The notes under the pieces: generated by a model
What the model was told of the DNA's origin: nothing
Seen by the model: the letters and a program-made list of their open reading frames with translations, nothing else
Database searches by the model: none
Program-made: the position numbers and the translations under genes
Shown: one piece after another, positions 1-58,360 of the stretch
Layout: every line of letters starts with the position of its first letter
Position numbering within the stretch: position 1 is the stretch's first letter
IMG/VR virus record: IMGVR_UViG_3300042473_001265
Span: 248,001 to 312,000 of that record
DNA length: 64,000 nt
Direction: 5' to 3' (one strand)

Positions 1-1
1 G

Positions 2-601
2 GAAAATTTAGAATTACTTCAAGAATTGAATCCCGATGTCAATCTTAGGATAAACACTAATCTTAGCAAGGTAGATACTGGAGTGTTTGATGCTGTTTGT
101 AGATTTAAAAATGTCCATTGGACCGTAAGTGTAGAAACTACTGAAGATGAATTTGAATACATACGATTTGGTGGCCGATGGCAGGATTTTTTAGATAATC
201 TAAACACAATTAGAAAACTAGATCATAAGATAAGTTTTAATATGTTATGGTTTTTGCTAAATCATGACAGTGTTTTTGATTGTGTAGATTATTTAAAAGG
301 ATTGGGATTTCATAACAATAGCTTTGTGATTGGAGCACTGCTAGGCCCTGATTACCTAAACATTAGACATTTACCGGAAAATGTGTTAAACTCATTGAAG
401 TTAAAATTAGAATCACGAATCAATGAGAATCCTGGATATCTACTTGAAGACAGTTATCAGAACATGCTACACTATATAACGCAACCAATTGAAAAGAATT
501 TAACAAATTCGTTTGATCAATTAGCAATAATGGATCAGCGGCGTGAAGTAGACAGCAGTAAAATTTTTACAGAATTATATACACTCAAAGAAGGAAAGTA
601 A
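2..601 (+). CDS. Radical SAM family protein, C-terminal part (truncated by window edge)
   Basis: Frame is open from base 2; 'WTVSVETTEDEFEYIRFGGRWQDFLDNL' resembles the S(I/V)D..G..YEYIR..W segment also seen in the radical SAM at 26410; the CxxxCxxC motif would lie upstream of the window. Confidence 0.6.
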   Translation, partial: ENLELLQELNPDVNLRINTNLSKVDTGVFDAVCRFKNVHWTVSVETTEDEFEYIRFGGRWQDFLDNLNTIRKLDHKISFNMLWFLLNHDSVFDCVDYLKGLGFHNNSFVIGALLGPDYLNIRHLPENVLNSLKLKLESRINENPGYLLEDSYQNMLHYITQPIEKNLTNSFDQLAIMDQRREVDSSKIFTELYTLKEGK

Positions 602-25871: not shown

Positions 25872-26413
25872 TACCTGGTTATAGCACAGACTTTGGACCA
25901 ATTCGTCTGATTCAGCAATTCAGATTATATCATTTGTCTCGCCCGGCTGTTAAAAAATGGCGTGCGACTCGTTACGGAATTCCGTATAAACTTGATTTTA
26001 CTGATCGATGGATTCTGGACAATTTAAAAAATAATAAACTGGTAGCAGTTGATTGCGCCGGCTGGTATTTTCAAGAGTTTGATATCAACACAACTTGTTT
26101 AGAAAGTGATATGTTATCTAAACAATACTTTCCCGGGTGCTATGTTGAGCCTGATATTCTTACGCATCGCCCAACCTACATTCCAACAGATGAAACGATA
26201 GTTTTTAAATTTCCTTGGTTTTTAAAATATGCAACTTTAACTCAATTTGTAAATTTTTTAAACGTGTGGGTCAAATCTGTTACTGTAATAAATTTTTATC
26301 CTATTTTTATTCAACATAATCATTTGAAATTTACTTTAGACTCATTGGTGAAAGAACAAGTTAGTTTTGACATAAAGATTGTTAATCCAACTCTGTGGGT
26401 GGTCTCGCCATGA
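25862..26413 (+). CDS. Hypothetical protein (AT-rich cassette)
   Basis: 183 aa, overlapping neighbours. Confidence 0.65.
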   Translation: MQIVPGYSTDFGPIRLIQQFRLYHLSRPAVKKWRATRYGIPYKLDFTDRWILDNLKNNKLVAVDCAGWYFQEFDINTTCLESDMLSKQYFPGCYVEPDILTHRPTYIPTDETIVFKFPWFLKYATLTQFVNFLNVWVKSVTVINFYPIFIQHNHLKFTLDSLVKEQVSFDIKIVNPTLWVVSP

Positions 26414-27438
26414 CTCGGTGTGTGTTAATACAACACGGATTGACGGTTAGTCATGACGGTAGTAGATTTGGAACATGTTGTTACAATCAAACAGACCCCG
26501 CAACATATACATCTGACAGTGTTGACCCAGTTGGTTGCCGTGCTTGTATAGATCAGGAAAATAATAATATATTTTCCTATCGGCAAGGAGCCAATCAGAT
26601 ATACGGGCTAGAACACAATCATTCGTTGCCTATAGTAGTGGATGTATATCCTAATAGAAATTGTGATCTAGCTTGTAAAATCTGTGGATCTCATTCTAGC
26701 TCTACCTGGGCAAAACTTGAAAATGTTAAAATCAATTCAAATTTTAACATGAATTTTTCAGATTTTAAAACTAAATTTAATAAAATTGACCTATCACAGG
26801 TGCAAGAAATTAATTTTTCAGGTGGCGAGCCGTTTTTAAACAATAATGTTAAACAGTACATAGAACAATTGTCGGACCGATGTGATTTTTCTAAAATAAC
26901 TTTACGACTTAGTACAAACGGATCACACAAACTAAATTCAAAACTAATAGATTTTTTCCTACAGTTTGCTTTAGTAAGGGTTCGATTTAGTTTAGATGAT
27001 ATCGGTACAGGACATGAATATCAACGTTGGCCATCGCGGTGGAACCAATGGGAAACCAACTGGAAGATTTTTTTAGAAGATATGCCACATACGGTCATGC
27101 CTGCTATAAATCGTACAATTGGATTACTTAATATTAATCGTTTGCACCTACTAGATAAATGGCACCAGCAACATCTGACTAGTAAATTTGGTGACCCTAT
27201 TGAATTAATAGATCACTACGTATCTGGATCATACAGTCTTGACAACTTGCCAATGGCACTGAAAGAACACATTGGTCAACATCGGGAAGTTTACAGTCGG
27301 GCATGGGCTGCTGTTAAAAATAGGTCAACTATTACGGATCTCACCAATTTAAGACAAACAATTGTAAAACACGATCAGTTGCATAACACCTCGTTAAAAG
27401 AATTCAATCCAGATCTTTATAACATTATATTTTCATGA
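26410..27438 (+). CDS. Radical SAM protein with N-terminal Cys-rich (twitch/SPASM-like) segment
   Basis: 'NCDLACKICGSHSSSTW' CxxxCxxC, 'NFSGGEPF', 'STNG', 'FSLDD.G..HEYQRWPS.W'; N-terminal C..CC...C..C. Confidence 0.9.
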   Translation: MTRCVLIQHGLTVSHDGSRFGTCCYNQTDPATYTSDSVDPVGCRACIDQENNNIFSYRQGANQIYGLEHNHSLPIVVDVYPNRNCDLACKICGSHSSSTWAKLENVKINSNFNMNFSDFKTKFNKIDLSQVQEINFSGGEPFLNNNVKQYIEQLSDRCDFSKITLRLSTNGSHKLNSKLIDFFLQFALVRVRFSLDDIGTGHEYQRWPSRWNQWETNWKIFLEDMPHTVMPAINRTIGLLNINRLHLLDKWHQQHLTSKFGDPIELIDHYVSGSYSLDNLPMALKEHIGQHREVYSRAWAAVKNRSTITDLTNLRQTIVKHDQLHNTSLKEFNPDLYNIIFS

Positions 27439-35121: not shown

Positions 35122-35325
35122 ATGGCATCAGGTAAAGTAAAATGGTTTAATGAAACCAAAGGTTTTGGGTTTATTACTCCAGACGCAGGCGGAGAAGAAC
35201 TGTTCGCACACTACACAGCAATTCAAACAGATGGATTCAAGGTCCTCAAAGAAAATCAGCGTGTATCTTACGATGTAGTTCAAGGACAAAAAGGCCTGCA
35301 AGCATCTAACATTGTGCCACAGTAA
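35122..35325 (+). CDS. cspA: Cold-shock protein (CspA family)
   Basis: 'GKVKWFN', RNP1 'KGFGFI', RNP2 'LFAHY', 'KGLQASN'. Confidence 0.97.
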
Positions 35326-35335
35326 ATCGCAACAG

Positions 35336-35357
35336 GCCGGGTTACTCCGGCTTTTTT
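35336..35357 (+). terminator. Rho-independent terminator
   Basis: GCCGG-GTTACT-CCGGC-TTTTTT. Confidence 0.85.
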
Positions 35358-35381: not shown

Positions 35382-35765
35382 ATGGCCTATTCAGAAAAAG
35401 TAGTTGATCATTATGAGAACCCAAGAAATGTAGGCAGCTTTGCCAAAGAAGATGGTGATGTCGGCACAGGCATGGTCGGGGCTCCGGCCTGCGGCGATGT
35501 GATGAAGCTGCAAATCAAAGTCACCGACGGAGTAATCACAGATGCAAGATTTAAAACATACGGTTGCGGCAGCGCGATTGCGTCAAGTTCGCTTGTTACT
35601 GAATGGGTCAAAGGACTCACCCTTGAGCAGGCGGAAACGATCAAAAATAGCGAAATTGCTACTGAGCTTGCCCTTCCCCCTGTTAAAATTCATTGTTCAA
35701 TACTTGCAGAAGATGCCATCAAAGCGGCGGTAGCTGACTATAGAATCAAGCATCCAGCGCAATGA
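35382..35765 (+). CDS. iscU: Fe-S cluster scaffold protein IscU
   Basis: 'DHYENPRNVG', 'GAPACGDVM', 'KTYGCGSAIASSS', 'LPPVKIHCS'. Confidence 0.97.
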   Translation: MAYSEKVVDHYENPRNVGSFAKEDGDVGTGMVGAPACGDVMKLQIKVTDGVITDARFKTYGCGSAIASSSLVTEWVKGLTLEQAETIKNSEIATELALPPVKIHCSILAEDAIKAAVADYRIKHPAQ

Positions 35766-36085
35766 TCGAAGTCACTGACACTGCTGCTAAAAAAATTAAA
35801 AAAAGTTTAGCCGCTCGCGGTCGCGGTGAAGGCATCCAAATTGGTGTACGAACCACTGGTTGTTCGGGACTTGCTTATGTGTTAGAATATGTAGACAATC
35901 CCAATTTGCATTGTGTACGACATTACGATTCAAATGGTGTACGGGTGTTCATTGATCCCAAACACCTGCCGTACTTGGATGGCATGATAGTAGATTTCAA
36001 AAGGAACGGCCTCAACGAAGGTTTTGAGTTTATCAACAAAAACGAGCGCGACCGCTGCGGTTGCGGAGAATCATTCAGAGTTTAG
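35762..36085 (+). CDS. iscA: Fe-S cluster carrier protein IscA
   Basis: 'GVRTTGCSGLAY', 'CGCGESF'. Confidence 0.95.
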   Translation: MIEVTDTAAKKIKKSLAARGRGEGIQIGVRTTGCSGLAYVLEYVDNPNLHCVRHYDSNGVRVFIDPKHLPYLDGMIVDFKRNGLNEGFEFINKNERDRCGCGESFRV

Positions 36086-37714
36086 ATGAGAGTAAAATTT
36101 TGTTCGCATAGTCTGACACAACTAATCAAGCATGAAAAAGTCAGTGTAAATCCTGCATGGCTCTACATGCAAAAATGGTACGAACTGCATGGAAAAAATC
36201 CCAATGTAAAATGGTTGCTTCCTGGGATTGTATTATTAGATCCAATGGATGTTGTAATTGATAAAATTGTGCAAGAACAACCTGATATTTTGGGTCTTGG
36301 ATTCTATGTTTGGAACTTTGACTTGCAATATCACATTGCCAGAGAAGTTAAAAAACAATTACCAGATATAATTATAGTCTGCGGCGGTCCGCAACTATCG
36401 GTACACAAAGAAACAGAGACTGACAACCAAGTTGATTTTTTCATCAACCATCCGTATATAGACTATGTAGTGTACGGCGACGGCGAACGACCATTTCAGC
36501 AAATTATTGATTATCATTCCGGGCTCCTGTTCAATAAAGACGAGTTTGTTAACATTATTGAAAATGCCAATGGGGTAAGAAAAATATATCCGCACGAAAC
36601 GTTGACAGATGAACTTTACCTAAGTCAAAGTCCTTATGTGAGTCAAGAAGCTCATATGGCCGAAGTGCGTGATCATCTGGCAGCTTACGGAATTCCAATC
36701 GAAGACCAATACTGGGCTATTGAATTTGCCCGAGGATGTATGTATAGTTGTACATTTTGTGATTGGTCACAAAATTTAACTAAAAAAGTCAAACGTCGTA
36801 CACACAACTGGAAACACGATATTGATTTGTTCCATCGACTAAATGTGGCCATACGAGAAACAGATGCCAACTTTGGACAATGGCCAGATGACATAAAAGC
36901 GTTTGATTATGCAATTTCTTTATATGATCCTGCTCGTAGTTTTTCTTTTATAGTGAACAACACTCCCAAACTCAAGAAAGATGTAACCGAGTATATTATT
37001 ACTCAAAATAGTCTTGTGTATGATGTTCCGCCTGTGATCAATCTTCAAGATGCCGATGAAGATGTATTAAAGGCAATCGATCGTCCAGCAGTTCCGTGGG
37101 AAGCTATTGTTAAAATGACAAACAATCTAAGAAATAACTTACCGCCTGAAAAATTTCGCAAGACAGAACTGCAATGCATACTAGGGTTACCGGGGCAAAC
37201 AGTTGACAGTCTAATTAATTCTTATGTTAAGTTTTTTGAATTGGGCTTGTTAAGAGCTTCATGGGCCAATTGGTCATTTTTACCAAACAGTCCAGCAGCT
37301 GATCCTGCTTATCAAAGATTCTGGGGGCTTGATATCAAGGAAGTGTACTTTGCATTTGAGTCTCATGTGGTGCCAGATCTTGGGGAACTATACAGCGAGT
37401 TAGCGTCTGGCAACAGTTTGTCAGACAAATTTTATAAGCTACCAATGGTGGTTGGTCATAAAACAATGAAAATGTTAGATTTATGGACTGCTCAAATACT
37501 AGCAAAAAAATGGAACGAGTTGACTAGTCGTGTAGATCTAGTAGAAAAATACAATAGTTCTCAGGTAAGAAACATACTGGGTAAATTAAAAACACACGCA
37601 ATAAAAGAAGCAACAACACAATATGACATACATCAACACCATATCAACCAGCATGGTATTGTTGTATGGGGTCATTACCAAACTGAATCAAAACTCATAC
37701 ACAAAAATCTTTAA
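36086..37714 (+). CDS. B12-binding-domain radical SAM protein
   Basis: 'PDILGLGFYVWN', 'IVCGGPQ', 'VVYGDGE', 'EFARGCMYSCTFCDW', 'ILGLPGQT'. Confidence 0.88.
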   Translation: MRVKFCSHSLTQLIKHEKVSVNPAWLYMQKWYELHGKNPNVKWLLPGIVLLDPMDVVIDKIVQEQPDILGLGFYVWNFDLQYHIAREVKKQLPDIIIVCGGPQLSVHKETETDNQVDFFINHPYIDYVVYGDGERPFQQIIDYHSGLLFNKDEFVNIIENANGVRKIYPHETLTDELYLSQSPYVSQEAHMAEVRDHLAAYGIPIEDQYWAIEFARGCMYSCTFCDWSQNLTKKVKRRTHNWKHDIDLFHRLNVAIRETDANFGQWPDDIKAFDYAISLYDPARSFSFIVNNTPKLKKDVTEYIITQNSLVYDVPPVINLQDADEDVLKAIDRPAVPWEAIVKMTNNLRNNLPPEKFRKTELQCILGLPGQTVDSLINSYVKFFELGLLRASWANWSFLPNSPAADPAYQRFWGLDIKEVYFAFESHVVPDLGELYSELASGNSLSDKFYKLPMVVGHKTMKMLDLWTAQILAKKWNELTSRVDLVEKYNSSQVRNILGKLKTHAIKEATTQYDIHQHHINQHGIVVWGHYQTESKLIHKNL

Positions 37715-37717
37715 CCA

Positions 37718-38434
37718 ATGTACAATCCAAAATTCAACTATCACTCACTTGCCCGAGAGCAAGTGGACGGAAAACGTCTATATGCCACTCCTGATGGCAA
37801 CAGGGTTCCTAGTGTAACCACTATTCTTGACAAGACCAAACCTGCAGAAAGTCGCATTGCACTGGCCAACTGGCGTAAAGCAGTGGGCGAAACAAAAGCA
37901 CAGCAAATCACAACAGAAGCGGCCAACCGCGGCACAAGAATGCACACCTATCTTGAAAACTATGTCAAGACAGGCGAAATCAAAGACAAAGGCACCAATC
38001 CGTTTGGATGGGCAAGTCACGCCATGGCCGAAGTTGTGATCGAAAACGGGCTTAAAAATGTAGATGAGTTTTGGGGTGTGGAAGTGCCCTTGTACTTTCC
38101 CGGCATTTACGCAGGTACAACAGACTGCTGTGGCATGCACAACAACCAACAAAGTATTTTGGACTTTAAGCAAACAAACAAGCCCAAAAAAATTGAGTGG
38201 ATTGAAGACTATTTCTTGCAACTGTGTGCCTATGCCGAAGCGCACAACGAAGTGTACGGCACAGACATACGCAAAGGTGTCATTTTAATGTGCGTTAAAC
38301 CCACCACAGATGACATGGGCAATGTGACCAGCGCACCGCAATACCAAGAATTTGTCATTGAAGGTGCGGAATTTGACCACTGGAAATCCCAATGGTGGAA
38401 AAGAGTCGAACAGTATTATCTGCTAAATAGTTGA
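37718..38434 (+). CDS. PD-(D/E)xK exonuclease
   Basis: 'PSVTTIL', 'RGTRMH', 'EVPLY', 'AGTTDC', 'LDFKQ', 'LQLCAYA'. Confidence 0.85.
   Translation: MYNPKFNYHSLAREQVDGKRLYATPDGNRVPSVTTILDKTKPAESRIALANWRKAVGETKAQQITTEAANRGTRMHTYLENYVKTGEIKDKGTNPFGWASHAMAEVVIENGLKNVDEFWGVEVPLYFPGIYAGTTDCCGMHNNQQSILDFKQTNKPKKIEWIEDYFLQLCAYAEAHNEVYGTDIRKGVILMCVKPTTDDMGNVTSAPQYQEFVIEGAEFDHWKSQWWKRVEQYYLLNS
38424..38429 (+). promoter_or_regulatory. TAAATA late-promoter-like motif
   Basis: Followed by GAGG SD and TTG start at 38453. Confidence 0.55.
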
Positions 38435-38452: not shown

Positions 38453-40036
38453 TTGGCTATTGTACAAATTTCGCGAATTACCCAGCGTAAAGGGTTACAA
38501 GAAGATCTACCGCAATTGGCAGGCGCTGAATTGGGATGGAGTATCGACGAACGCAGATTGTTCATTGGTAACGGAACATTGGAAGAAGGTGCTCCAGTAA
38601 TTGGTAATACAGAAATTCTCACTGAATTTTCTGACTTATTGTATCTGGTGCAAGATTATGTATATTCGGGCCAAGAAGCCACCGGATACACAGTACAAAC
38701 AGGTGCAACACCCGGAACTCCGGTTCAACTGTCCTTGCAAAACTGGATGGATCAATTTGCCACAGTCAAAGACTTTGGTGCAGTTGGCAACGGTGTTGCT
38801 GACGACACTGCGGCCATTAACCGCGCACTTTATCAATTGTACTGTAGAGAAGTGAATCCTGCAATTCGTAGAAGTTTATTCTTTCCAGCTGGCATTTACA
38901 AAGTTTCAGGCACTATTGTTATTCCACCCTATGCCACACTGATTGGCGAAGGCCCCAAGAACAGTATTATTCAACTGACAGCAACTGCCACAGCAGTTTA
39001 CACAATGCAGACTGGCGACAGCCTACAACAGACCGGTGTCAACATTGGCACCAATGGCGCTCAACCTCCAATAAGTGTCACATGTGAAAATATGGCCTTT
39101 GCCAGTCTCAAAGCAACAGATGTTGCATGTATAGAACAGGCAACTGAATTTGTGTTTAATCAGGTTGAATTCCTTGGACCATTGACCACTGTTGATTTGA
39201 CATCGGCTGTGGCCGATATTTCGTGTGTTAAATTTATCAGTACTGCTGCCAATGACACGCATCAGATCAAGTTTGACAACTGTACATTCTCCGGCTGTAC
39301 CTATGGCATGCGAACAGATCAGCAGGTGCGTGGTATTGACTTTACTGGATCACATTTCTCCACACTGTTCGAAGGCATACTGGTTGAGCCAAACCCCCTG
39401 GGTTCTGCCTATGACCCGCGTGGTATTGGCATACAAAGTTGCGACTTTGATACTATCTATGCTCGCGGCATTGTGTTTGAAGTGGAACGCAATGCCACTG
39501 CACAAAATACATTCGGTGATGTCGGCAACCACTTTGGTGGTGTCACACAGCCCTACACTGCCATTATTGATTTTGTATCGCCCAACAACATCAGCGTTGG
39601 CGATATTTTTGATCGACCAGACCAATATGCCACACTGTATCCCAGAGTTGATTTGAATGGCACTGCCAGCATTGCGTTTACCAATGGTCAACAGTTGGCC
39701 ATGGGTCCGTATGTGCGAGAATCTGGCCTCACAGCAACATTGAACAACAATGTAACTTCGCCCACTGCTGCTTTTTCTTACAGTGAACTTGACACCTGGT
39801 CACTCAACATTGATTACAGCATTTCTAGAAGCACTGCATATAGAACTGGCAGAATTACTGTTGTTTTATTTGACGGCGCCGGTGCGCTAACATACACTGA
39901 TGATTTTTCTGAAAATACTTCTACTGGCATCACGCTGACAGTGTCACAGACCGGTAATGAAATTTTTGTAAACTACGTCAGCACAAATACCGGCACCGGT
40001 GGATCGATAACCTACAGCATAAACCATATACATTGA
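38453..40036 (+). CDS. Tailspike/tail-fibre protein (Mtd_N-like N-terminus, pectate-lyase-like beta-helix)
   Basis: 'GAELGWSIDERRLFIGNG', 'TVKDFGAVGNGVADDTAAI', 'FFPAGIYKV'. Confidence 0.8.
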   Translation: MAIVQISRITQRKGLQEDLPQLAGAELGWSIDERRLFIGNGTLEEGAPVIGNTEILTEFSDLLYLVQDYVYSGQEATGYTVQTGATPGTPVQLSLQNWMDQFATVKDFGAVGNGVADDTAAINRALYQLYCREVNPAIRRSLFFPAGIYKVSGTIVIPPYATLIGEGPKNSIIQLTATATAVYTMQTGDSLQQTGVNIGTNGAQPPISVTCENMAFASLKATDVACIEQATEFVFNQVEFLGPLTTVDLTSAVADISCVKFISTAANDTHQIKFDNCTFSGCTYGMRTDQQVRGIDFTGSHFSTLFEGILVEPNPLGSAYDPRGIGIQSCDFDTIYARGIVFEVERNATAQNTFGDVGNHFGGVTQPYTAIIDFVSPNNISVGDIFDRPDQYATLYPRVDLNGTASIAFTNGQQLAMGPYVRESGLTATLNNNVTSPTAAFSYSELDTWSLNIDYSISRSTAYRTGRITVVLFDGAGALTYTDDFSENTSTGITLTVSQTGNEIFVNYVSTNTGTGGSITYSINHIH

Positions 40037-40478: not shown

Positions 40479-42797
40479 ATGTCAACAATCAATGTAGTAA
40501 AACGAAGCGGTCGGCGCGAGATCATGGCCATCGAAAAATGGCAAACCCAAGTAGCAAAAGTGTGCCAAGGCATAGCAGATGTCAGCCAAAGTATGGTGGA
40601 GATCAAAGCACAATTGCATTTCTACGATGGTATCACCACCAAAGAAATTGACGGTATCACACTTAGAGCTATTGTGGATTTGATCGATGTTGAATCAAAT
40701 CCTGATGTGGGCCATACCAACTATCAATATGTGGCCGGCAAACAAAGACTTAGCATGTTGAGAAAAGATGTGTACGGCAGCTATGATGTGCCATCACTGT
40801 ACACGATTGTAAAAAAGAATGTGGCCACTGGCCTGTACACTCCTGAGCTGCTGGAATGGTACACTGAAGATGATTGGAACCGAATGGATTCTTTCATTGA
40901 CCACAGCAAAGATGAACTGTATGGTTATGCAGCCATTGAACAGCTGATTGAAAAATATCTAGTTAAAAATCGTTCAACAGGACAAATTTATGAAACTCCA
41001 CAAATTAGATACATGGTCGCGGCCGCTACTGTATTTCACTCAGAAGAACCGAACACAGCGAGAATGCGCTTCATCAAAGAATACTACAACGCTGCCAGTG
41101 ATGGGCTATTTACTCTTGCTACTCCTGTTCTTGCTGGGCTTGGTACTCCTACGAAACAATTTTCATCTTGCGTTCTTATTAGATCAGATGATGATTTGGA
41201 TAGTATTTTCGCGTCTGGTGAAATGATGGCCAAGTATGCCAGCAAGCGAGCTGGCATTGGATTAGAGATTGGTAGATTGCGTCCACTAGGTTCGCCCATT
41301 CGTGGTGGTGAGATCATGCACACAGGTATGATACCATTCTTGAAGAAATGGTTTGGAGATTTGCGTAGTTGTAGTCAAGGAGGTATTCGTAATGCTAGTG
41401 CTACTGTGTTTTACCCTATTTGGCATCATCAATTTGATGATCTTATTGTACTCAAGAACAATCAAGGGACTGAAGAGACCCGAGTTCGACACATGGATTA
41501 TGGAGTCGTATTGTCAGCATTCTTCTGGAGACGATTTAAAAACAAAGAAGACATAACATTCTTTGATCCTAACGAAGTGCCCGACTTGTATCAAGCGTTC
41601 TATAGTAATACAGAACTATTCGAAGAACTTTATGTAAAGTATGAAAAGCAATCTGGCCTGCGTAAGAAAACTATGAGTGCTGAAGAAGTATTTAAATCAG
41701 GCATCTTGAAGGAGCGCACAGACACTGGACGCATCTATCTAGTGTTCATTGACAATGTGATGAAGCAAGGACCGTTTGATCCTGAATACCACACCATTTA
41801 CCAAAGTAACCTTTGTTGTGAAATACTTTTACCTACTCGTTCTTTTAAGCGTCTCGATGATGCTGATGGGCGCATCGCTTTATGCACTCTTGGTTCAATT
41901 AATTGGGGTGCCTTCCGTAATCCTGAAGATATGCGCAGGGCTTGTCGCATTCTACATAGAAGCCTCAATAATATACTGGACTATCAAGATTTCCTATCAA
42001 TTCAGTCGAAGTTGAGCAACGATGAAATCAGACCACTGGGAATTGGTATCACCAATCTTGCCTACTGGCATGCCAAGCGTAGTTTGAAATATGGTGAGAA
42101 GGATGCTCTGGCAGAAGTCAAAACTTGGATGGAACATCAGACATATTATCTAACTGAGATGAGTGTTGAACTGGCTGAGGAGCGAGGCCGATGTGAAGGC
42201 AGTGATCACACACGCTATGGCCAAGGACAGTTTCCCTGGGAACTTCGTGCAGTAGGAGTCAATGAACTGACTGATTTTACCCCGGAACTTGAATGGGAAA
42301 CACTTCGTGCTAGAATGAAAGTGAGTGGCGTTCGTAATGCTACTAATGGAGCAATTGCTCCTGTTGAATCCAGTTCGGTGGCCATCAACTCAACCAACGG
42401 CATTGAAATGCCCATGAGCCTGATCACTGTGAAAGAAAGCAAGGCCGGCAGTTTGATTCAAGTGGCGCCCGAATACAACCGGTTGAAAAACAAATATCAA
42501 CTGATGTGGGCACAAAAAGATTGTGATGGCTACTTGAAAACAGCCGCAGTACTAGCTGCCTATGTGGACCAAAGCATCAGTACCAACACATTCTACAATC
42601 CTGCACACTTTGCAGATCGTAAGGTACCAACAACTCTAATTGCTCGGAACTTGATGCAGTCGCACTACTGGGGTCTAAAAACTTTCTACTACAGCCTGAT
42701 CAACAAAGCAGGTAGCAAAGGTCAAGACGAAGTTGTTGCACCATTGGAAGCGATTGAGTTTGATGATCAAGAAGATTGCGAGGCATGCAAGCTCTAG
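40479..42797 (+). CDS. nrdA: Ribonucleotide reductase class Ia alpha subunit with ATP-cone
   Basis: 'VVKRSG', 'FSSCVL', 'NLCCEI', 'IAPVESS', 'KTFYY', C-terminal 'CEAC'. Confidence 0.97.
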   Translation: MSTINVVKRSGRREIMAIEKWQTQVAKVCQGIADVSQSMVEIKAQLHFYDGITTKEIDGITLRAIVDLIDVESNPDVGHTNYQYVAGKQRLSMLRKDVYGSYDVPSLYTIVKKNVATGLYTPELLEWYTEDDWNRMDSFIDHSKDELYGYAAIEQLIEKYLVKNRSTGQIYETPQIRYMVAAATVFHSEEPNTARMRFIKEYYNAASDGLFTLATPVLAGLGTPTKQFSSCVLIRSDDDLDSIFASGEMMAKYASKRAGIGLEIGRLRPLGSPIRGGEIMHTGMIPFLKKWFGDLRSCSQGGIRNASATVFYPIWHHQFDDLIVLKNNQGTEETRVRHMDYGVVLSAFFWRRFKNKEDITFFDPNEVPDLYQAFYSNTELFEELYVKYEKQSGLRKKTMSAEEVFKSGILKERTDTGRIYLVFIDNVMKQGPFDPEYHTIYQSNLCCEILLPTRSFKRLDDADGRIALCTLGSINWGAFRNPEDMRRACRILHRSLNNILDYQDFLSIQSKLSNDEIRPLGIGITNLAYWHAKRSLKYGEKDALAEVKTWMEHQTYYLTEMSVELAEERGRCEGSDHTRYGQGQFPWELRAVGVNELTDFTPELEWETLRARMKVSGVRNATNGAIAPVESSSVAINSTNGIEMPMSLITVKESKAGSLIQVAPEYNRLKNKYQLMWAQKDCDGYLKTAAVLAAYVDQSISTNTFYNPAHFADRKVPTTLIARNLMQSHYWGLKTFYYSLINKAGSKGQDEVVAPLEAIEFDDQEDCEACKL

Positions 42798-43435: not shown

Positions 43436-44536
43436 ATGAGCCAAGCGCAATACAACTTAAAAACAAAAACAGATTATCTCAATCGTAAGATGTTTCTGGA
43501 TCCTGCGGGTCCTGTGACCATTCAACGCTTTGAAGAAGTCAAATACAACAAGATTGTAAAATTTGAACAAGAGGCTCGCGGATTCTTCTGGGTGCCCGAG
43601 GAAGTCAGCCTGACCAAGGATGCCAACGACTTCAAGGAAGCCAGCAGCACAGTCAAACATATTTTTACATCAAACCTGCTGCGTCAAACAGCACTGGACA
43701 GTTTACAAGGTCGTGGACCCACACAGGTGTTTACTCCTGTGGTATCAATTCCTGAATTAGAAGCCTTAATGTACAACTGGGGATTCTTTGAAACCAACAT
43801 TCACAGTAGAAGTTACAGTCACATCATCCGTAACATCTACAATGTGCCCAAGGATGTGTTCAGCACAATCCATGACACAAAAGAAATTGTTGAAATGGCC
43901 AGTACAATTGGCCTGTATTATGATCGCCTGCACATGATCAACTGCCGCAAAGAACTACAAGAAGATTTTGACGAATATGAACACATCAAAGCCATCTGGT
44001 TAGCACTGAATGCCAGCTACGGACTAGAAGCGTTCAGATTCATGGTCAGCTTTGCCACCAGCTTGGCCATGGTTGAGAACAGAATCTTCATTGGCAATGG
44101 CAATATCATCAGCTTGATACTGCAAGACGAAATTCTACACAAGGACTGGACAGCCTGGATCATCAATCAGGTGGTCAAAGAAGATCCACGCTTTGCCCGA
44201 GCCAAGCAAGAATGCGAAGCCGAAGTGTATCAAATGTATCTAGATGTGATTCGTGAAGAAAAAGCCTGGGCCGACTATTTGTTCAATCAAGGTCCAGTGA
44301 TTGGACTCAATGCCAACATTCTCAAAGACTTTGTGGACTACACAGCCGTGGGCGCACTGAAAGAAATTGGTATCAAGTATCAAGAACCTGCACCTCGTTC
44401 AACCCCCATTCCGTGGTTCAACAAGCATACAAACACAGCCAACAAGCAGACAGCTTTGCAAGAAAATGAAAGCACAAATTATGTCATTGGCGTGATGTCG
44501 TCTGACCTGGACTACGAACAACTACCGGAGCTATAA
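43436..44536 (+). CDS. nrdB: Ribonucleotide reductase class Ia beta subunit
   Basis: 'FFWVPEEV', 'LDSLQGR', 'ETNIHSRSY', 'LEAFRF', 'DEILH'. Confidence 0.97.
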   Translation: MSQAQYNLKTKTDYLNRKMFLDPAGPVTIQRFEEVKYNKIVKFEQEARGFFWVPEEVSLTKDANDFKEASSTVKHIFTSNLLRQTALDSLQGRGPTQVFTPVVSIPELEALMYNWGFFETNIHSRSYSHIIRNIYNVPKDVFSTIHDTKEIVEMASTIGLYYDRLHMINCRKELQEDFDEYEHIKAIWLALNASYGLEAFRFMVSFATSLAMVENRIFIGNGNIISLILQDEILHKDWTAWIINQVVKEDPRFARAKQECEAEVYQMYLDVIREEKAWADYLFNQGPVIGLNANILKDFVDYTAVGALKEIGIKYQEPAPRSTPIPWFNKHTNTANKQTALQENESTNYVIGVMSSDLDYEQLPEL

Positions 44537-56215: not shown

Positions 56216-57424
56216 ATGACCATCAGATCAACACCCACGCATTGCAGTTTTTGTGACAAGCACAAGGATCAAGTCGTCAAACTGATTGTGGGGCACAATG
56301 TAGGCATATGCAACGAGTGTGTTGATTTTTGTCACGGGCTACTGATAAAAGAACAGGCCAAAACAAAAAACGTCACAGAAGAATCAATTTTAGATCCACG
56401 AGCAATACACAAATATCTTGATCAGTATGTGATTGGTCAACCAACTGCTAAAATTGTGTTGAGTGTGGCTGTGGCCAATCATTACAAGCGCATCAGTGAT
56501 ACAGGTCTAGAACAAGAAATACAAAAAGCCAATATCTTAATAACAGGACCAACCGGCACAGGCAAAACACTGATGGCCCGTACTGTGGCCAAATATTTAG
56601 ATGTTCCTTTTGTCATTGCAGATGCAACCACATTGACCGAAGCAGGTTATGTGGGTGATGATGTTGACAGTTTGATCACACGGTTATATCATGCCAGTGG
56701 AAATGATGTGGAACGCACACAGCGCGGTATTATATTCCTAGACGAAGTAGACAAAATAGCCCGCAAAAGCGAAAGCGCCACGGTAACACGGGACATATCC
56801 GGCGAGGGTGTGCAGCAAGCACTGCTCAAACTGATCGAAGGTACCAAGTGCAAAGTGGCCCAGCAAAATAGTCGCAAGGTCTCAACAGGTGAAACAGTTG
56901 ACATCGACACTACCAACATCCTGTTTATCTGTGGTGGAGCTTTTGTTGGGCTAGACAAAGTTATCAAAACCCGCACACACGGAACTGCCATTGGATTTGG
57001 TGCAAAGTTAACAGTGCCAAACAACGCCACAACAGAAGCAATCACTCCAGACGATCTAGTACGCTACGGAATGATACCGGAGTTTGTGGGAAGATTTCCC
57101 AGCATTATACAACTGGACGAGCTGACCAAACCACAACTTATTACCATTCTTACCGAAGTAAAAAACAACCTGGTTGGTCAGTACAGATGGTTGTTTAACC
57201 AAGATGGGGTAGCATTGGACTTTGATACCGACAGTTTAGATCTAATTGCTGAACGCACAATGGTCACAAAAACTGGTGCTCGTGGACTGCATACAGAACT
57301 AGAGCGTGTGTTGTTGCCGCATATGTACAACTTGAAAGATTATCAGTCACGCAATGTGCTAAAAATTGCCATTGACAAAACACAAGTCACAACGCCTCTT
57401 AAATTAGAACAACAAAATTCTTAA
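56216..57424 (+). CDS. clpX: ATP-dependent Clp protease ATP-binding subunit ClpX
   Basis: 'CSFC...CNEC..FC', 'GPTGTGKT', 'GYVG', 'FLDEVDK', 'IGFG', 'GARGL'. Confidence 0.95.
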   Translation: MTIRSTPTHCSFCDKHKDQVVKLIVGHNVGICNECVDFCHGLLIKEQAKTKNVTEESILDPRAIHKYLDQYVIGQPTAKIVLSVAVANHYKRISDTGLEQEIQKANILITGPTGTGKTLMARTVAKYLDVPFVIADATTLTEAGYVGDDVDSLITRLYHASGNDVERTQRGIIFLDEVDKIARKSESATVTRDISGEGVQQALLKLIEGTKCKVAQQNSRKVSTGETVDIDTTNILFICGGAFVGLDKVIKTRTHGTAIGFGAKLTVPNNATTEAITPDDLVRYGMIPEFVGRFPSIIQLDELTKPQLITILTEVKNNLVGQYRWLFNQDGVALDFDTDSLDLIAERTMVTKTGARGLHTELERVLLPHMYNLKDYQSRNVLKIAIDKTQVTTPLKLEQQNS

Positions 57425-57525: not shown

Positions 57526-57984
57526 ATGACAAAAACTCTCACCCTTCGCTCTTTCGACATTCCTGCAATTCACAAATTTGGCATCGGATTCGACAACATG
57601 TTTGATGATCTCATGCGTGTGAGTGCTCAACAATCTACCACAAATTATCCACCTTATGATATTGTACAAATCAACGAAGATGAGTACATGATTGCTGTGG
57701 CTGTGGCCGGATTTGGCGACGACAATCTTTCAGTGATCAAGGACAAAAAAGTTTTGGTCATTGAAGGTAAGCACAGCCGTGAAACTGTGGACAATGAAGA
57801 TTCTACTGCAAAATATCTGCACAAAGGCATCAGTGAAAGACATTTCCGCAGGGAATTTCAGTTGGCTGATCATGTGGAAATTGTCAATGCAAATCTTGAA
57901 CTGGGCATCTTGAGCATACACCTAAAGCGTGATATTCCTGAAGAAGCCAAGCCAAAGACCATTGCAATCAACTACAAAAAGTAA
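57526..57984 (+). CDS. hsp20: Small heat-shock protein (Hsp20/IbpA family)
   Basis: 'IGFDNMF', 'NYPPYDI', 'AVAGF', 'YLHKGISER.F.R.F.L', 'GILSI.L'. Confidence 0.95.
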   Translation: MTKTLTLRSFDIPAIHKFGIGFDNMFDDLMRVSAQQSTTNYPPYDIVQINEDEYMIAVAVAGFGDDNLSVIKDKKVLVIEGKHSRETVDNEDSTAKYLHKGISERHFRREFQLADHVEIVNANLELGILSIHLKRDIPEEAKPKTIAINYKK

Positions 57985-58045
57985 TATAATAATCATAAGT
58001 ACAGTGGCAGCACAGTGCTGCCACTACTACAACAAAGGACACACT

Positions 58046-58360
58046 ATGACATCACCAGATATCAATACATTAATCAAATCAAAAGTAGAACTGCGTGAAC
58101 CACCAATGTTTAAGATCATCTACTTGAACGACACCAAGACATCTGTAGATTTTGTAGTTGAAAGTTTAATCACACACTTTGAATACACAGCAGACACTGC
58201 TGTCGCCATCACTGAAGATATCCATAATTCTGGATCCGCAGTGGTAGCAGTATTGCCCTACGAAATTGCTGAACAAAAAGGCATCGAAGTCACTGTGGAT
58301 GCTCGCAATCATAATTTTCCATTGCAGATCAAGCTGGAACCTGAAACAGTTGTGCATTGA
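58046..58360 (+). CDS. clpS: ClpS N-degron adaptor-like protein
   Basis: 'PPMFKIIYLND..T..DFV', 'IHNSG.AVV...YEIAE', 'FPL'; AAGGA SD before ATG 58046. Confidence 0.9.
   Translation: MTSPDINTLIKSKVELREPPMFKIIYLNDTKTSVDFVVESLITHFEYTADTAVAITEDIHNSGSAVVAVLPYEIAEQKGIEVTVDARNHNFPLQIKLEPETVVH

What the first reader, a model, noticed from the sequence alone, without database searches (positions are those of the whole stretch)
35382..37714. Phage Fe-S assembly genes (iscU-iscA) fused into an operon with a B12-dependent radical SAM
iscU keeps all three Cys and the HscA-binding LPPVK motif; iscA keeps CxG/CGC; the B12 radical SAM starts on the base after the iscA stop. No iscS, hscAB or fdx is in the window, so the phage would plug its own scaffold and carrier into the host ISC machinery to feed its multiple [4Fe-4S] enzymes. 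B12 radical SAMs typically C- or P-methylate unactivated positions, which hints at an unknown phage methylation chemistry.
Basis: partly seen in the sequence, partly recalled or inferred. Interest (0 to 1): 0.65.

Follow-up and report, generated by a model that had tools for sequence, protein, structure and literature searches.

The report
Phage Fe-S genes beside B12 methylase
A 340-kb T4-like freshwater phage carries its own iron-sulfur scaffold (IscU) and carrier (IscA) directly followed by a cobalamin-type radical SAM enzyme; the Fe-S genes are a widespread, already described kind of phage helper gene, while the enzyme belongs to an uncharacterised phage family whose substrate is unknown.

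Summary
Window 35382-37714 holds three abutting same-strand genes. They are IscU (all ligands and LPPVK kept), an A-type carrier (three Cys kept) and a B12-binding radical SAM (CxxxCxxC).

The window lies in a 340-kb T4-like jumbo phage. That phage has 16 radical SAM genes, a second carrier (ErpA) beside a superoxide-dismutase-like gene, and no IscS, HscB, HscA or ferredoxin. The "phage scaffold on host ISC machinery" reading is therefore reasonable, but it was already proposed for marine T4-like phages in 2017.

The "fusion" with the B12 enzyme is lineage-specific:
- In the 80 viral IscU loci examined, the conserved unit is iscU-iscA-exonuclease.
- Only the closest subclade of the B12 family sits inside that unit, and at varying positions.
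- The B12 gene is compositionally atypical for the genome.
- A 90%-complete jumbo phage has 19 radical SAMs and no isc genes.

The enzyme resembles the iterative C-methylases TokK and CysS in sequence and predicted fold. It keeps their two signature tryptophans. No full-length relative was found in 301 sampled Burkholderiales genomes. Its substrate is unknown.

Verdict: real, partly known, moderately interesting.

The parts
35122..35325 (+). Cold-shock-domain protein gene. It is the upstream neighbour and not part of the module.
   Evidence: PF00313 CSD, E 8e-28
35334..35353 (+). Terminator-like GC hairpin followed by a T run, 29 nt before the iscU start. It probably marks the 5' boundary of the isc transcription unit.
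   Evidence: Consensus scan and the sequence itself. The scan is not above chance for the region as a whole.
35382..35765 (+). iscU, the Fe-S scaffold, 127 aa.
   Evidence: TIGR01999 scores 215.5 against a cut-off of 192.4. phrog_8429 is a NifU-like AMG family. All ligands and LPPVK are invariant in 81 viral copies. The protein is 83-87% identical to Burkholderiales IscU. A complex model with a bacterial IscS passes its controls.
35762..36085 (+). iscA-like A-type Fe-S carrier, 107 aa. Its start overlaps the iscU stop (ATGA).
   Evidence: PF01521 E 8.4e-17. TIGR00049 scores 92.5 against 58.8. TIGR02011 scores 130.7, below its cut-off of 150.6. C34, C99 and C101 are invariant in 74 viral copies. 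It belongs to a viral clade with 99% support.
36086..37714 (+). B12-binding radical SAM enzyme, 542 aa, of the TokK/CysS type (class B). It starts on the base after the iscA stop.
   Evidence: PF02310 and PF04055. A family profile matches TokK 7kdx at E 1.8e-44. The AF2 model has pLDDT 89.5. Foldseek gives TokK TMq 0.70 and CysS 0.69. GC is 0.376, at the 7th percentile of genes in this genome.
36248..36505 (+). Cobalamin-binding Rossmann domain (residues 55-140). It contains the family-invariant W76-N77, G100-G101, H107 and Y130-G-D-G-E134.
   Evidence: W76 aligns with TokK Trp76, the residue under the cobalt.
36719..37216 (+). Radical SAM core (residues 212-377). The cluster motif C218-x3-C222-x2-C225 lies at nt 36737-36760. 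W227 follows it and equals TokK Trp215.
37718..38434 (+). PD-(D/E)XK exonuclease, 238 aa. It is the conserved downstream partner of viral iscU-iscA in gene order only.
   Evidence: phrog_298 exonuclease, E 2.8e-52. It follows iscA in about 48 of 80 viral loci. D136, D149 and K151 are invariant and no Cys is conserved, so it is not an Fe-S protein.

Best explanation
iscU and iscA form an old, phage-adapted auxiliary module of a large clade of T4-like jumbo phages. These phages are freshwater by inference and probably infect Burkholderiales. The phage makes the scaffold and the carriers, and it has a second carrier, ErpA, elsewhere in the genome. It relies on the host for the cysteine desulfurase IscS, the chaperones HscB and HscA, and ferredoxin. 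The extra scaffold and carrier capacity most likely serves the phage's own 16 radical SAM enzymes, which need up to about 28 [4Fe-4S] sites. It may also keep host Fe-S biogenesis running during infection.

The downstream gene is a cobalamin-dependent (class B) radical SAM enzyme of the TokK/ThnK/CysS type, most likely a C-methylase of an unactivated carbon. It is an accessory gene that sits inside the isc module only in this sub-lineage. It is probably co-transcribed and translationally coupled with iscA. It is one Fe-S client among many, not a dedicated partner.

Shown: gene identities, conserved residues, gene order across loci, and genome-wide presence and absence. Inferred: co-transcription, cluster delivery to phage enzymes, cobalamin use and methyl transfer.
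For: Identity and conservation of the isc genes:
- Family matches.
- All ligand residues are invariant in 81 viral IscU and 74 viral IscA copies.
- The 27 predicted IscS-contact residues are 99.5% conserved and match the bacterial consensus at 27 of 27 positions.
- IscS-IscU complex model: score 0.76, best of 3 controls 0.00. That mark was reached by 51 of 78 solved complexes and 2 of 108 mismatched pairs. The runs agree in at least 90% of their contacts and the partner's pLDDT is at least 89.

Dependence on the host: no IscS, Fer2, HscB, HSP70 or NifU-C in the 98%-complete genome.

Fe-S clients and further Fe-S genes:
- 16 CxxxCxxC radical SAM ORFs. Ten pass the NF033640 twitch-domain family cut-off and two more score just below it.
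- A second carrier, an ErpA equivalog (143 bits against 117), lies next to a SOD-like gene and another radical SAM.

Age of the module:
- None of 80 viral IscU loci has IscS, IscR, HscBA or Fdx, and 77 of 80 have IscA adjacent.
- Viral IscA forms a clade with SH-aLRT 99.
- The GC3 of iscU and iscA is typical for the genome.

The B12 enzyme:
- Family profile against TokK, E 1.8e-44.
- Predicted fold: TokK TMq 0.70, CysS 0.69.
- W76 and W227 are invariant in the family. They match TokK Trp76 and Trp215, which the TokK paper says are shared only by TokK, ThnK and CysS.

Prior proposal of the same logic for marine phages: PMC5332604.
Against: - There are no expression data.
- G021 is 323 kb and 90% complete. 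It has 19 radical SAM hits, including a member of the B12 family, but no IscU and no carrier. A high radical SAM load therefore does not require phage isc genes.
- Radical SAM genes are not enriched near viral IscU overall. The density is 2.4 per 100 kb of flank, against 4.7 per 100 kb genome-wide.
- PF04055 is borderline for the enzyme.
- The KedN5 subfamily model scores far below its cut-off, 66.8 against 700.
- No cobalamin synthesis or salvage gene was found. Only CobS_N and B12-binding were tested.
- The IscS-IscU model may score from memory of solved complexes.
Confidence: 0.6

Rival explanations
1. Dedicated maturation unit. The isc module is a docking site for radical SAM genes because co-translation with IscU and IscA is needed to load these particular enzymes. 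On this reading the B12 enzyme is a specific client of the phage IscA.
For: - There are zero or overlapping bases between the genes.
- In the whole subclade at 46% identity or more (about 13 loci) the B12 gene sits inside the isc module. Its position varies. It lies after IscA in the query. It lies between IscU and IscA, with 4-nt overlaps, in L209 and L345.
- Other radical SAM types are inserted between IscU and IscA, or just after IscA, in 7 of 80 loci. All are downstream of iscU and on the same strand.
- The second carrier locus (IF-1, SOD, ErpA) also hosts a radical SAM in G000, and a B12-family member in L020.
Against: - 73 of 80 viral isc modules have no radical SAM within 3 kb.
- Most B12-family loci have no isc gene within 8 kb.
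- The close relatives G003 and G007 keep isc genes away from radical SAM genes.
- The B12 gene has atypically low GC.
Confidence: 0.2
2. Classical host-sustaining AMG. The phage IscU, IscA and ErpA mainly keep host Fe-S enzymes working (respiration, nucleotide and cofactor synthesis) after host gene expression is shut off, or under iron or oxidative stress. The adjacency to the radical SAM is incidental.
For: - The isc module is conserved in loci with no radical SAM nearby.
- ErpA is paired with a superoxide-dismutase-like gene.
- A radical SAM-rich phage exists without isc genes (G021).
- Marine phages carry carriers without many Fe-S clients (PMC5332604).
Against: - All four near-complete members of this capsid clade have IscU, two carriers and 12-19 radical SAM hits together.
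- This explanation and the best explanation are not mutually exclusive.
Confidence: 0.15
3. The B12-domain enzyme is not a methylase. It could do other class B chemistry, such as ring contraction, cyclisation or dehydrogenation, or it could have lost cobalamin use.
For: - No curated subfamily model passes its cut-off.
- PHROGs has no family for it.
- OxsB and TsrM are also structural matches.
- The C-terminal domain is shorter than in TokK (542 against 681 aa), and the substrate-binding residues cannot be mapped.
Against: - The best sequence and fold matches are the two iterative C-methylases TokK and CysS.
- Both Trp residues specific to that group are invariant in 34 diverse family members.
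Confidence: 0.15

Closest known systems
Fe-S assembly AMGs of marine T4-like environmental viral genomes (Nishimura et al. 2017, mSphere, PMC5332604; earlier Pacific Ocean Virome reports cited there)
   Same: - These are phage-encoded IscU and A-type carriers without the rest of the ISC operon.
- They occur in T4-like genomes that also carry up to 12 radical SAM genes.
- The same functional proposal was made: the clusters serve viral as well as host Fe-S proteins.
   Different: - The clade is different. It is freshwater by inference, and its IscU is closest to Burkholderiales rather than Gammaproteobacteria/SAR86.
- IscU and IscA occur together as a fixed iscU-iscA-exonuclease unit in most of the 80 loci examined.
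- There is an added ErpA plus a SOD-like locus.
- A B12-type radical SAM lies inside the module.
Bacterial ISC operon iscRSUA-hscBA-fdx (seen here in Polynucleobacter sphagniphilus, L083)
   Same: - IscU is 84% identical to bacterial IscU, and the IscS-contact residues are identical in consensus.
- IscA keeps the three Cys.
- The iscU-iscA order is the same.
   Different: - There is no iscR, iscS, hscB, hscA or fdx anywhere in the phage.
- Phage IscA has diverged more: 56% identity to bacterial IscA, against 71% among the bacteria themselves. It forms its own clade.
- Viral IscU carries a signature T at position 53, where bacteria have E.
TokK/ThnK (carbapenem C6 alkylation) and CysS (cystobactamid), cobalamin-dependent radical SAM iterative C-methylases
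   Same: - The architecture has the N-terminal 5-stranded Rossmann cobalamin domain with a beta-hairpin, then the radical SAM barrel, then a helical C-terminal domain.
- A Trp lies under the cobalt position (W76).
- An active-site Trp follows the third cluster Cys (FCDW).
- These are the best sequence and fold matches.
   Different: - Sequence identity is only about 22%.
- The protein is 140 aa shorter at the C-terminus, and the TokK substrate-binding residues could not be mapped.
- It is a phage-borne family with no antibiotic gene cluster around it.
- The substrate is unknown.
E. coli A-type carrier relay IscU -> IscA -> ErpA -> apo-proteins (Vinella et al. 2009; recalled from my own knowledge, not read here)
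   Same: The phage encodes one member of each step: IscU, an IscA-like carrier and an ErpA equivalog.
   Different: The three genes lie at two loci 260 kb apart. No transfer order has been tested.

Membership tests
IscU scaffold (TIGR01999) | Equivalog model score above the curated cut-off | tested here: met
   215.5 bits against a cut-off of 192.4
IscU scaffold (TIGR01999) | Three cluster Cys, the Asp and His ligands, and the LPPVK HscA-binding motif | tested here: met
   C37, D39, C62, LPPVK 98-102, H104 and C105 are present. They are invariant in 81 viral copies.
IscU scaffold (TIGR01999) | Docks on cysteine desulfurase IscS | tested here: inconclusive
   The complex model scores 0.76, with a best control of 0.00. 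That mark was reached by 51 of 78 solved complexes and 2 of 108 mismatched pairs. The runs agree in at least 90% of contacts and the partner's pLDDT is at least 89. The interface residues are conserved. A similar complex is solved, so the pass shows likeness and not binding.
IscU scaffold (TIGR01999) | Encoded in an isc operon together with iscS | tested here: not met
   No PF00266 match in the whole phage genome. No IscS in any of 80 viral loci.
IscA / A-type carrier | PF01521 and TIGR00049 above their cut-offs, with the three conserved Cys | tested here: met
   PF01521 scores 61.8 against 26.3. TIGR00049 scores 92.5 against 58.8. C34, C99 and C101 are invariant.
IscA / A-type carrier | IscA equivalog (TIGR02011 or NF007049) score above the cut-off | tested here: not met
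   TIGR02011 scores 130.7 against 150.6. NF007049 scores 122.3 against 181. The protein is IscA-like and belongs to a viral clade.
Cobalamin-dependent (class B) radical SAM methylase, TokK/ThnK/CysS group | N-terminal B12-binding Rossmann domain | tested here: met
   PF02310 scores 38.4 against 32.1. The AF2 model shows the strand pattern plus the hairpin. The fold matches TokK.
Cobalamin-dependent (class B) radical SAM methylase, TokK/ThnK/CysS group | Radical SAM CxxxCxxC core | tested here: met
   C218, C222 and C225 are invariant in 34 homologues. PF04055 itself is borderline, at 27.7 and 29.6 against 29.5.
Cobalamin-dependent (class B) radical SAM methylase, TokK/ThnK/CysS group | Trp beneath the cobalt (TokK Trp76) and active-site Trp (TokK Trp215) | tested here: met
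   The HMM alignment places the family-invariant W76 and W227 on TokK W76 and W215. The significance of these residues comes from 10.1101/2021.07.10.451909 and PMC13331322.
Cobalamin-dependent (class B) radical SAM methylase, TokK/ThnK/CysS group | Binds cobalamin and transfers methyl to an sp3 carbon | not testable with these tools
   This needs purified protein, with UV-vis and EPR spectroscopy and SAH, 5'-dA and product assays.
KedN5 subfamily (NF033712) | Subfamily model score above the cut-off | tested here: not met
   66.8 bits against a cut-off of 700
Single operon iscU-iscA-radical SAM | Same strand, no intergenic space, shared transcript | tested here: inconclusive
   The strand and the abutting or overlapping codons are shown. 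A terminator-like hairpin lies only upstream of iscU. No RNA data could be obtained.
Single operon iscU-iscA-radical SAM | Gene order conserved across relatives | tested here: not met
   The B12 gene is present in only 1-2 of 80 viral IscU loci. Its position relative to iscA varies within the subclade. It is absent from the isc locus of the close relatives G003, G007 and G016.

The most novel reading that the evidence does not exclude
The 542-aa protein may found a phage-specific clade of TokK/CysS-type iterative C-methylases. The word search returned at least 610 metagenomic relatives, and no full-length member was found in 301 sampled Burkholderiales genomes. On this reading the clade builds branched alkyl groups on a phage-directed product that is still unknown, such as a modified sugar or glycan, a lipid-like molecule or a carrier-tethered metabolite. 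It would act together with the arrays of twitch-domain radical SAMs, aminotransferases, dioxygenases and carbamoyltransferases of these jumbo phages. The phage isc and erpA loci would be preferred insertion sites because co-expression with the scaffold and carriers is needed to mature these enzymes.
Probability: 0.2. Interest if true: 0.7.

Novelty: new member of a known kind. Interest (0 to 1): 0.45.

Why it matters
Phage-encoded Fe-S assembly genes are counted as auxiliary metabolic genes in ocean and lake viromes, but their clients are unknown. This genome offers a compact test case. It holds a scaffold, two carriers and 16 radical SAM clients in one phage, and one client physically abuts the carrier gene.

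If the phage scaffold really feeds phage enzymes, that would explain how jumbo phages can afford large radical SAM repertoires. The B12 enzyme family is a lead for new cobalamin-dependent chemistry in viruses. It would also make phage fitness depend on host or community vitamin B12.

Tried and rejected
2. T4 late-promoter motif TATAAATA. There are 3 matches in the window against 2.0 expected, so it is not informative.
3. The exonuclease after the module as an Fe-S (Cas4-like) client. Rejected, because no Cys is conserved in 40 homologues.
4. Correlation between isc presence and radical SAM load.
   - All near-complete members of the capsid clade have both, so there is no variance to test.
   - Fragments cannot show absence.
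   - The one informative outgroup, G021, is a counter-example.
   - The result is inconclusive and leans against a strict link.
5. Enrichment of radical SAM genes near viral IscU. Not found: 2.4 against 4.7 per 100 kb.
6. Cultured phages. In the GenBank phage collection the B12 family has only two weak hits (24-25% identity), both in gut phage contigs. IscU matched one annotated phage, C48C1.
7. Host origin of the B12 enzyme.
   - In 301 sampled Burkholderiales genomes, only B12-domain matches of 55 bits or less were found.
   - One of those genomes, G325, is unpublished.
8. A carrier-protein or ketosynthase lead from a marine relative, L343.
   - The 99-aa neighbour has no acyl-carrier motif.
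   - G000 has no ketosynthase homologue.
9. The Atlas feature search returned only generic B12 radical SAM clusters.
10. The large representative search was not run. The word search had already returned 610 relatives, and that library carries no annotation.
Full report
**What is there**

Window 35382-37714 contains three same-strand ORFs with no spacing.
- iscU lies at 35382-35765.
- An A-type carrier gene lies at 35762-36085 and overlaps iscU by ATGA.
- A 542-aa gene lies at 36086-37714. Its ATG follows the TAG of iscA directly.

IscU passes the curated equivalog model (TIGR01999, 215.5 against 192.4 bits). It has C37, D39, C62, LPPVK 98-102, H104 and C105.

The carrier passes PF01521 and TIGR00049. 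It falls short of the IscA equivalog cut-off (130.7 against 150.6). It has C34, C99 and C101.

The third protein has a B12-binding domain (PF02310, 38.4 against 32.1). It has a radical SAM core with C218-x3-C222-x2-C225. PF04055 is borderline at 27.7 and 29.6 against 29.5.

A cold-shock gene and a terminator-like hairpin (35334-35353) precede iscU. A PD-(D/E)XK exonuclease (phrog_298) starts 3 nt after the third gene.

**The genome**

The window is bases 248001-312000 of a 340,172-bp virus record estimated 98% complete. The record has a T4-type major capsid gene (PF07068, 328 bits).

It carries 16 ORFs with a CxxxCxxC radical SAM motif.
- Ten pass the NF033640 "twitch domain-containing radical SAM" model, and two more score just below its cut-off.
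- One is QueE-like.
- Two are unassigned.
- One is the B12 enzyme.

If each twitch-domain protein holds an auxiliary cluster, which I infer from the family name, the demand is up to about 28 [4Fe-4S] sites.

The genome has no IscS-type desulfurase, no Fer2 ferredoxin, no HscB, no Hsp70 and no NifU-C domain. It has only one B12-binding domain and no CobS_N.

It does have a second carrier at G000:23702-24025. This is an ErpA equivalog (143 against 117 bits). Upstream of it lie a Fe/Mn-superoxide-dismutase-like gene, an SGNH-like gene, a twitch-domain radical SAM and IF-1.

The phage therefore encodes the scaffold and both carrier types. It lacks the sulfur donor, the chaperones and the reductant.

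**How the isc genes behave across viruses**

Findings for the 80 best loci:
- None has IscS, IscR, HscB, HscA or Fdx nearby.
- 77 have the carrier next to IscU.
- About 48 have the exonuclease right after the carrier.
- The B12 enzyme appears only in the query's own fragment and, as a 30% match, in one other locus.

All cluster ligands and LPPVK are invariant in 81 viral IscU copies. The three Cys are invariant in 74 viral IscA copies.

Phage IscU is as close to bacterial IscU (median 84%) as bacterial IscU sequences are to each other (85%). Its best matches are Burkholderiales such as Limnohabitans, Rhodoferax, Polynucleobacter and Hydrogenophaga. This gives a tentative host assignment.

Phage IscA is more diverged, at 56% to bacteria against 71% among bacteria. 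It forms a viral clade of 72 of 74 sequences with 99% SH-aLRT support. A single viral clade for IscU is not rejected (AU p = 0.52). Viral IscU carries a T at position 53 where 95% of the bacterial sequences have E.

The GC3 of iscU and iscA is typical of the phage genome (46th and 41st percentile). These are long-resident phage genes under purifying selection, not recent captures or bacterial contamination.

**Does phage IscU fit the host machinery?**

I modelled phage IscU with the IscS of Polynucleobacter sphagniphilus.
- The score was 0.76, against a best of 3 controls of 0.00.
- That mark was reached by 51 of 78 solved complexes and by 2 of 108 mismatched pairs.
- The runs agree in at least 90% of their contacts, and the partner's pLDDT is at least 89.

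An IscS-IscU complex has been solved (my own knowledge), so this pass shows likeness rather than binding.

The 27 predicted contact residues are 99.5% conserved among viral copies. Their consensus is identical to the bacterial consensus at all 27 positions, against 85 of 97 positions elsewhere.

**The B12 radical SAM**

No curated subfamily fits. The best is KedN5, at 66.8 against 700 bits. PHROGs has no family for the protein.

The word search found 610 relatives. Among the 120 best that were listed, the sources are almost entirely metagenome collections, and the few names they carry are automatic and inconsistent. GenBank phages gave only two weak hits. In 301 sampled Burkholderiales genomes there were only B12-domain matches of 55 bits or less. 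The family therefore looks phage-specific among what was searched.

A profile of 34 diverse members matches TokK (7kdx) at E 1.8e-44, CysS (9n1b) at 7e-23 and OxsB weakly. An AlphaFold model (pLDDT 89.5, pTM 0.88) is closest to TokK (TMq 0.70, E 4e-28) and CysS (0.69), ahead of TsrM and OxsB.

The family-invariant W76 and W227 align with TokK Trp76 and Trp215.
- Trp76 lies under the cobalt.
- Trp215 lies in the active site, in the FCDW motif after the third Cys.
- The TokK study states that these two Trp are shared by TokK, ThnK and CysS but not by other characterised cobalamin radical SAM methylases.

I therefore read the protein as a cobalamin-dependent C-methylase of that type. Its substrate is unknown.

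**Is the junction with iscA meaningful?**

I examined 58 non-redundant viral loci with a family member.

Only the subclade at 46% identity or more to the query (about 13 loci) lies in the isc module, and the order varies.
- IscU-IscA-B12 occurs in the query.
- IscU-B12-IscA, with 4-nt overlaps, occurs in L209 and L345.
- A twitch-domain radical SAM lies between IscU and IscA in L204 and L206.

More distant members sit elsewhere.
- Some lie beside twitch-domain radical SAMs, a DegT aminotransferase, TauD dioxygenases, a sulfotransferase-like gene and a desaturase-like gene.
- Others lie beside a TctA-like membrane protein and a ketosynthase in marine contigs.

Close capsid relatives keep iscU-iscA without this enzyme at the locus (G003, G007, G016). 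The gene's GC (0.376, 7th percentile) is atypical for the genome.

Against pure chance, every radical SAM gene found within 3 kb of a viral IscU (10 genes in 7 of 80 loci) lies downstream, inside the iscU-iscA-exonuclease unit. The IF-1/SOD/ErpA locus also hosts a radical SAM in G000, and a B12-family member in L020.

The overall density of radical SAM genes near IscU (2.4 per 100 kb) is nevertheless below the genome average (4.7 per 100 kb).

My reading is that the gene is probably co-transcribed with the isc genes and has been retained there in one sub-lineage. It is not a conserved operon, and no dedicated partnership is shown.

All four near-complete genomes of the capsid clade have IscU, two carriers and 12-19 radical SAM hits.
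- G000 has 15 Pfam hits.
- G003 has 19.
- G007 has 12.
- G016 has 12.

There is therefore no variance within the clade. G021 is 323 kb and 90% complete. It has 19 hits, including a B12-family member, but no IscU and no carrier. Fragments cannot show absence. The link is plausible but not strict.

**Prior knowledge**

Nishimura et al. 2017 (PMC5332604) described marine T4-like viral genomes with IscU and/or A-type carriers plus up to 12 radical SAM genes. They proposed that the viral assembly proteins serve viral as well as host Fe-S proteins. They cite earlier virome reports of sufA and iscU as AMGs. A 2026 lake study lists iscU/nifU and erpA as viral AMGs (PMC13760526). I found no paper on this B12 radical SAM family in phages.

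**Verdict**

The finding is real. The Fe-S part is a new freshwater member of a known kind of phage auxiliary module. Features I did not find described in the papers I read are the fixed iscU-iscA-exonuclease unit, the ErpA plus SOD-like locus, and the phage-specific TokK/CysS-like enzyme family.

The mechanism rests on homology, conservation and gene content. It proposes host IscS loading a phage scaffold, with phage carriers delivering clusters to many phage radical SAMs, one of which is a B12-dependent methylase. No expression or biochemical data were available.

Noticed in passing
G000:20676-24025 (outside the window; L022:676-4025): A second Fe-S-related locus. In order it holds IF-1 (infA), a twitch-domain radical SAM (516 aa), an SGNH-like gene, a Fe/Mn superoxide-dismutase-like gene and an ErpA equivalog. 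A marine or lake relative, L020, has B12 radical SAM, IF-1, SOD and a carrier in the same order.
   Followed up: partly
G000:128753-149789 (outside the window; L027/L028): Five tandem twitch-domain radical SAM paralogues lie at 139044-146694 on the minus strand. Beside them are a DegT/EryC1-type aminotransferase, a NodU/CmcH-type carbamoyltransferase and several ORFs with no family. This looks like a sugar or small-molecule tailoring cluster.
   Followed up: partly
window 1-601 and 26395-27438 (+): Two further radical SAM genes lie inside the window. One is the 3' part of a twitch-domain radical SAM (G000:247447-248601). The other is a 347-aa relative that scores just below the NF033640 cut-off (147 against 170).
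   Followed up: partly
IscU residue 53 (window 35538-35540): Viral IscU copies carry T at position 53 (88% of 81). Bacterial IscU has E there (95% of 80). This is the only strong lineage signature in an otherwise host-like protein.
   Followed up: no
window 38453-40036 (+): A pectate-lyase-like beta-helix protein with tail-spike and tail-fibre PHROG matches. It is a likely depolymerase-type receptor-binding protein, sitting between the exonuclease and nrdA.
   Followed up: no
window 40479-42797 (+) and 43436-44536 (+): A class Ia ribonucleotide reductase alpha subunit with an ATP-cone (NF006578, 808 bits, just under its 813 cut-off). A probable beta subunit lies downstream. The order isc, exonuclease, nrdA, nrdB is syntenic across many related contigs.
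   Followed up: partly
window 56216-57424 and 57929-58360 (+): BLAST matches to the ClpX-like and ClpS-like genes of a marine relative (L343): 45% and 52% identity. These are phage-encoded protease-adaptor genes, of possible relevance to Fe-S protein turnover.
   Followed up: no
L343:7001-9899 and L344:7001-9896: In a marine subclade (39-41% identical to the query) the B12 radical SAM gene overlaps a downstream TctA-like membrane protein gene. In G000 the TctA-like gene lies elsewhere, at 114442-115767.
   Followed up: partly
G021 (record of L244, 322,647 bp, 90% complete): A jumbo phage with 19 radical SAM hits, including a B12-family member, but no IscU and no A-type carrier. It is a counter-example to a strict link between isc genes and radical SAM load.
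   Followed up: partly
G003, G007, G012 (records of L293, L337, L321): Close capsid relatives carry other, longer B12-domain radical SAM proteins (603-758 aa). Cobalamin-type radical SAMs therefore recur in this phage clade in several forms.
   Followed up: no
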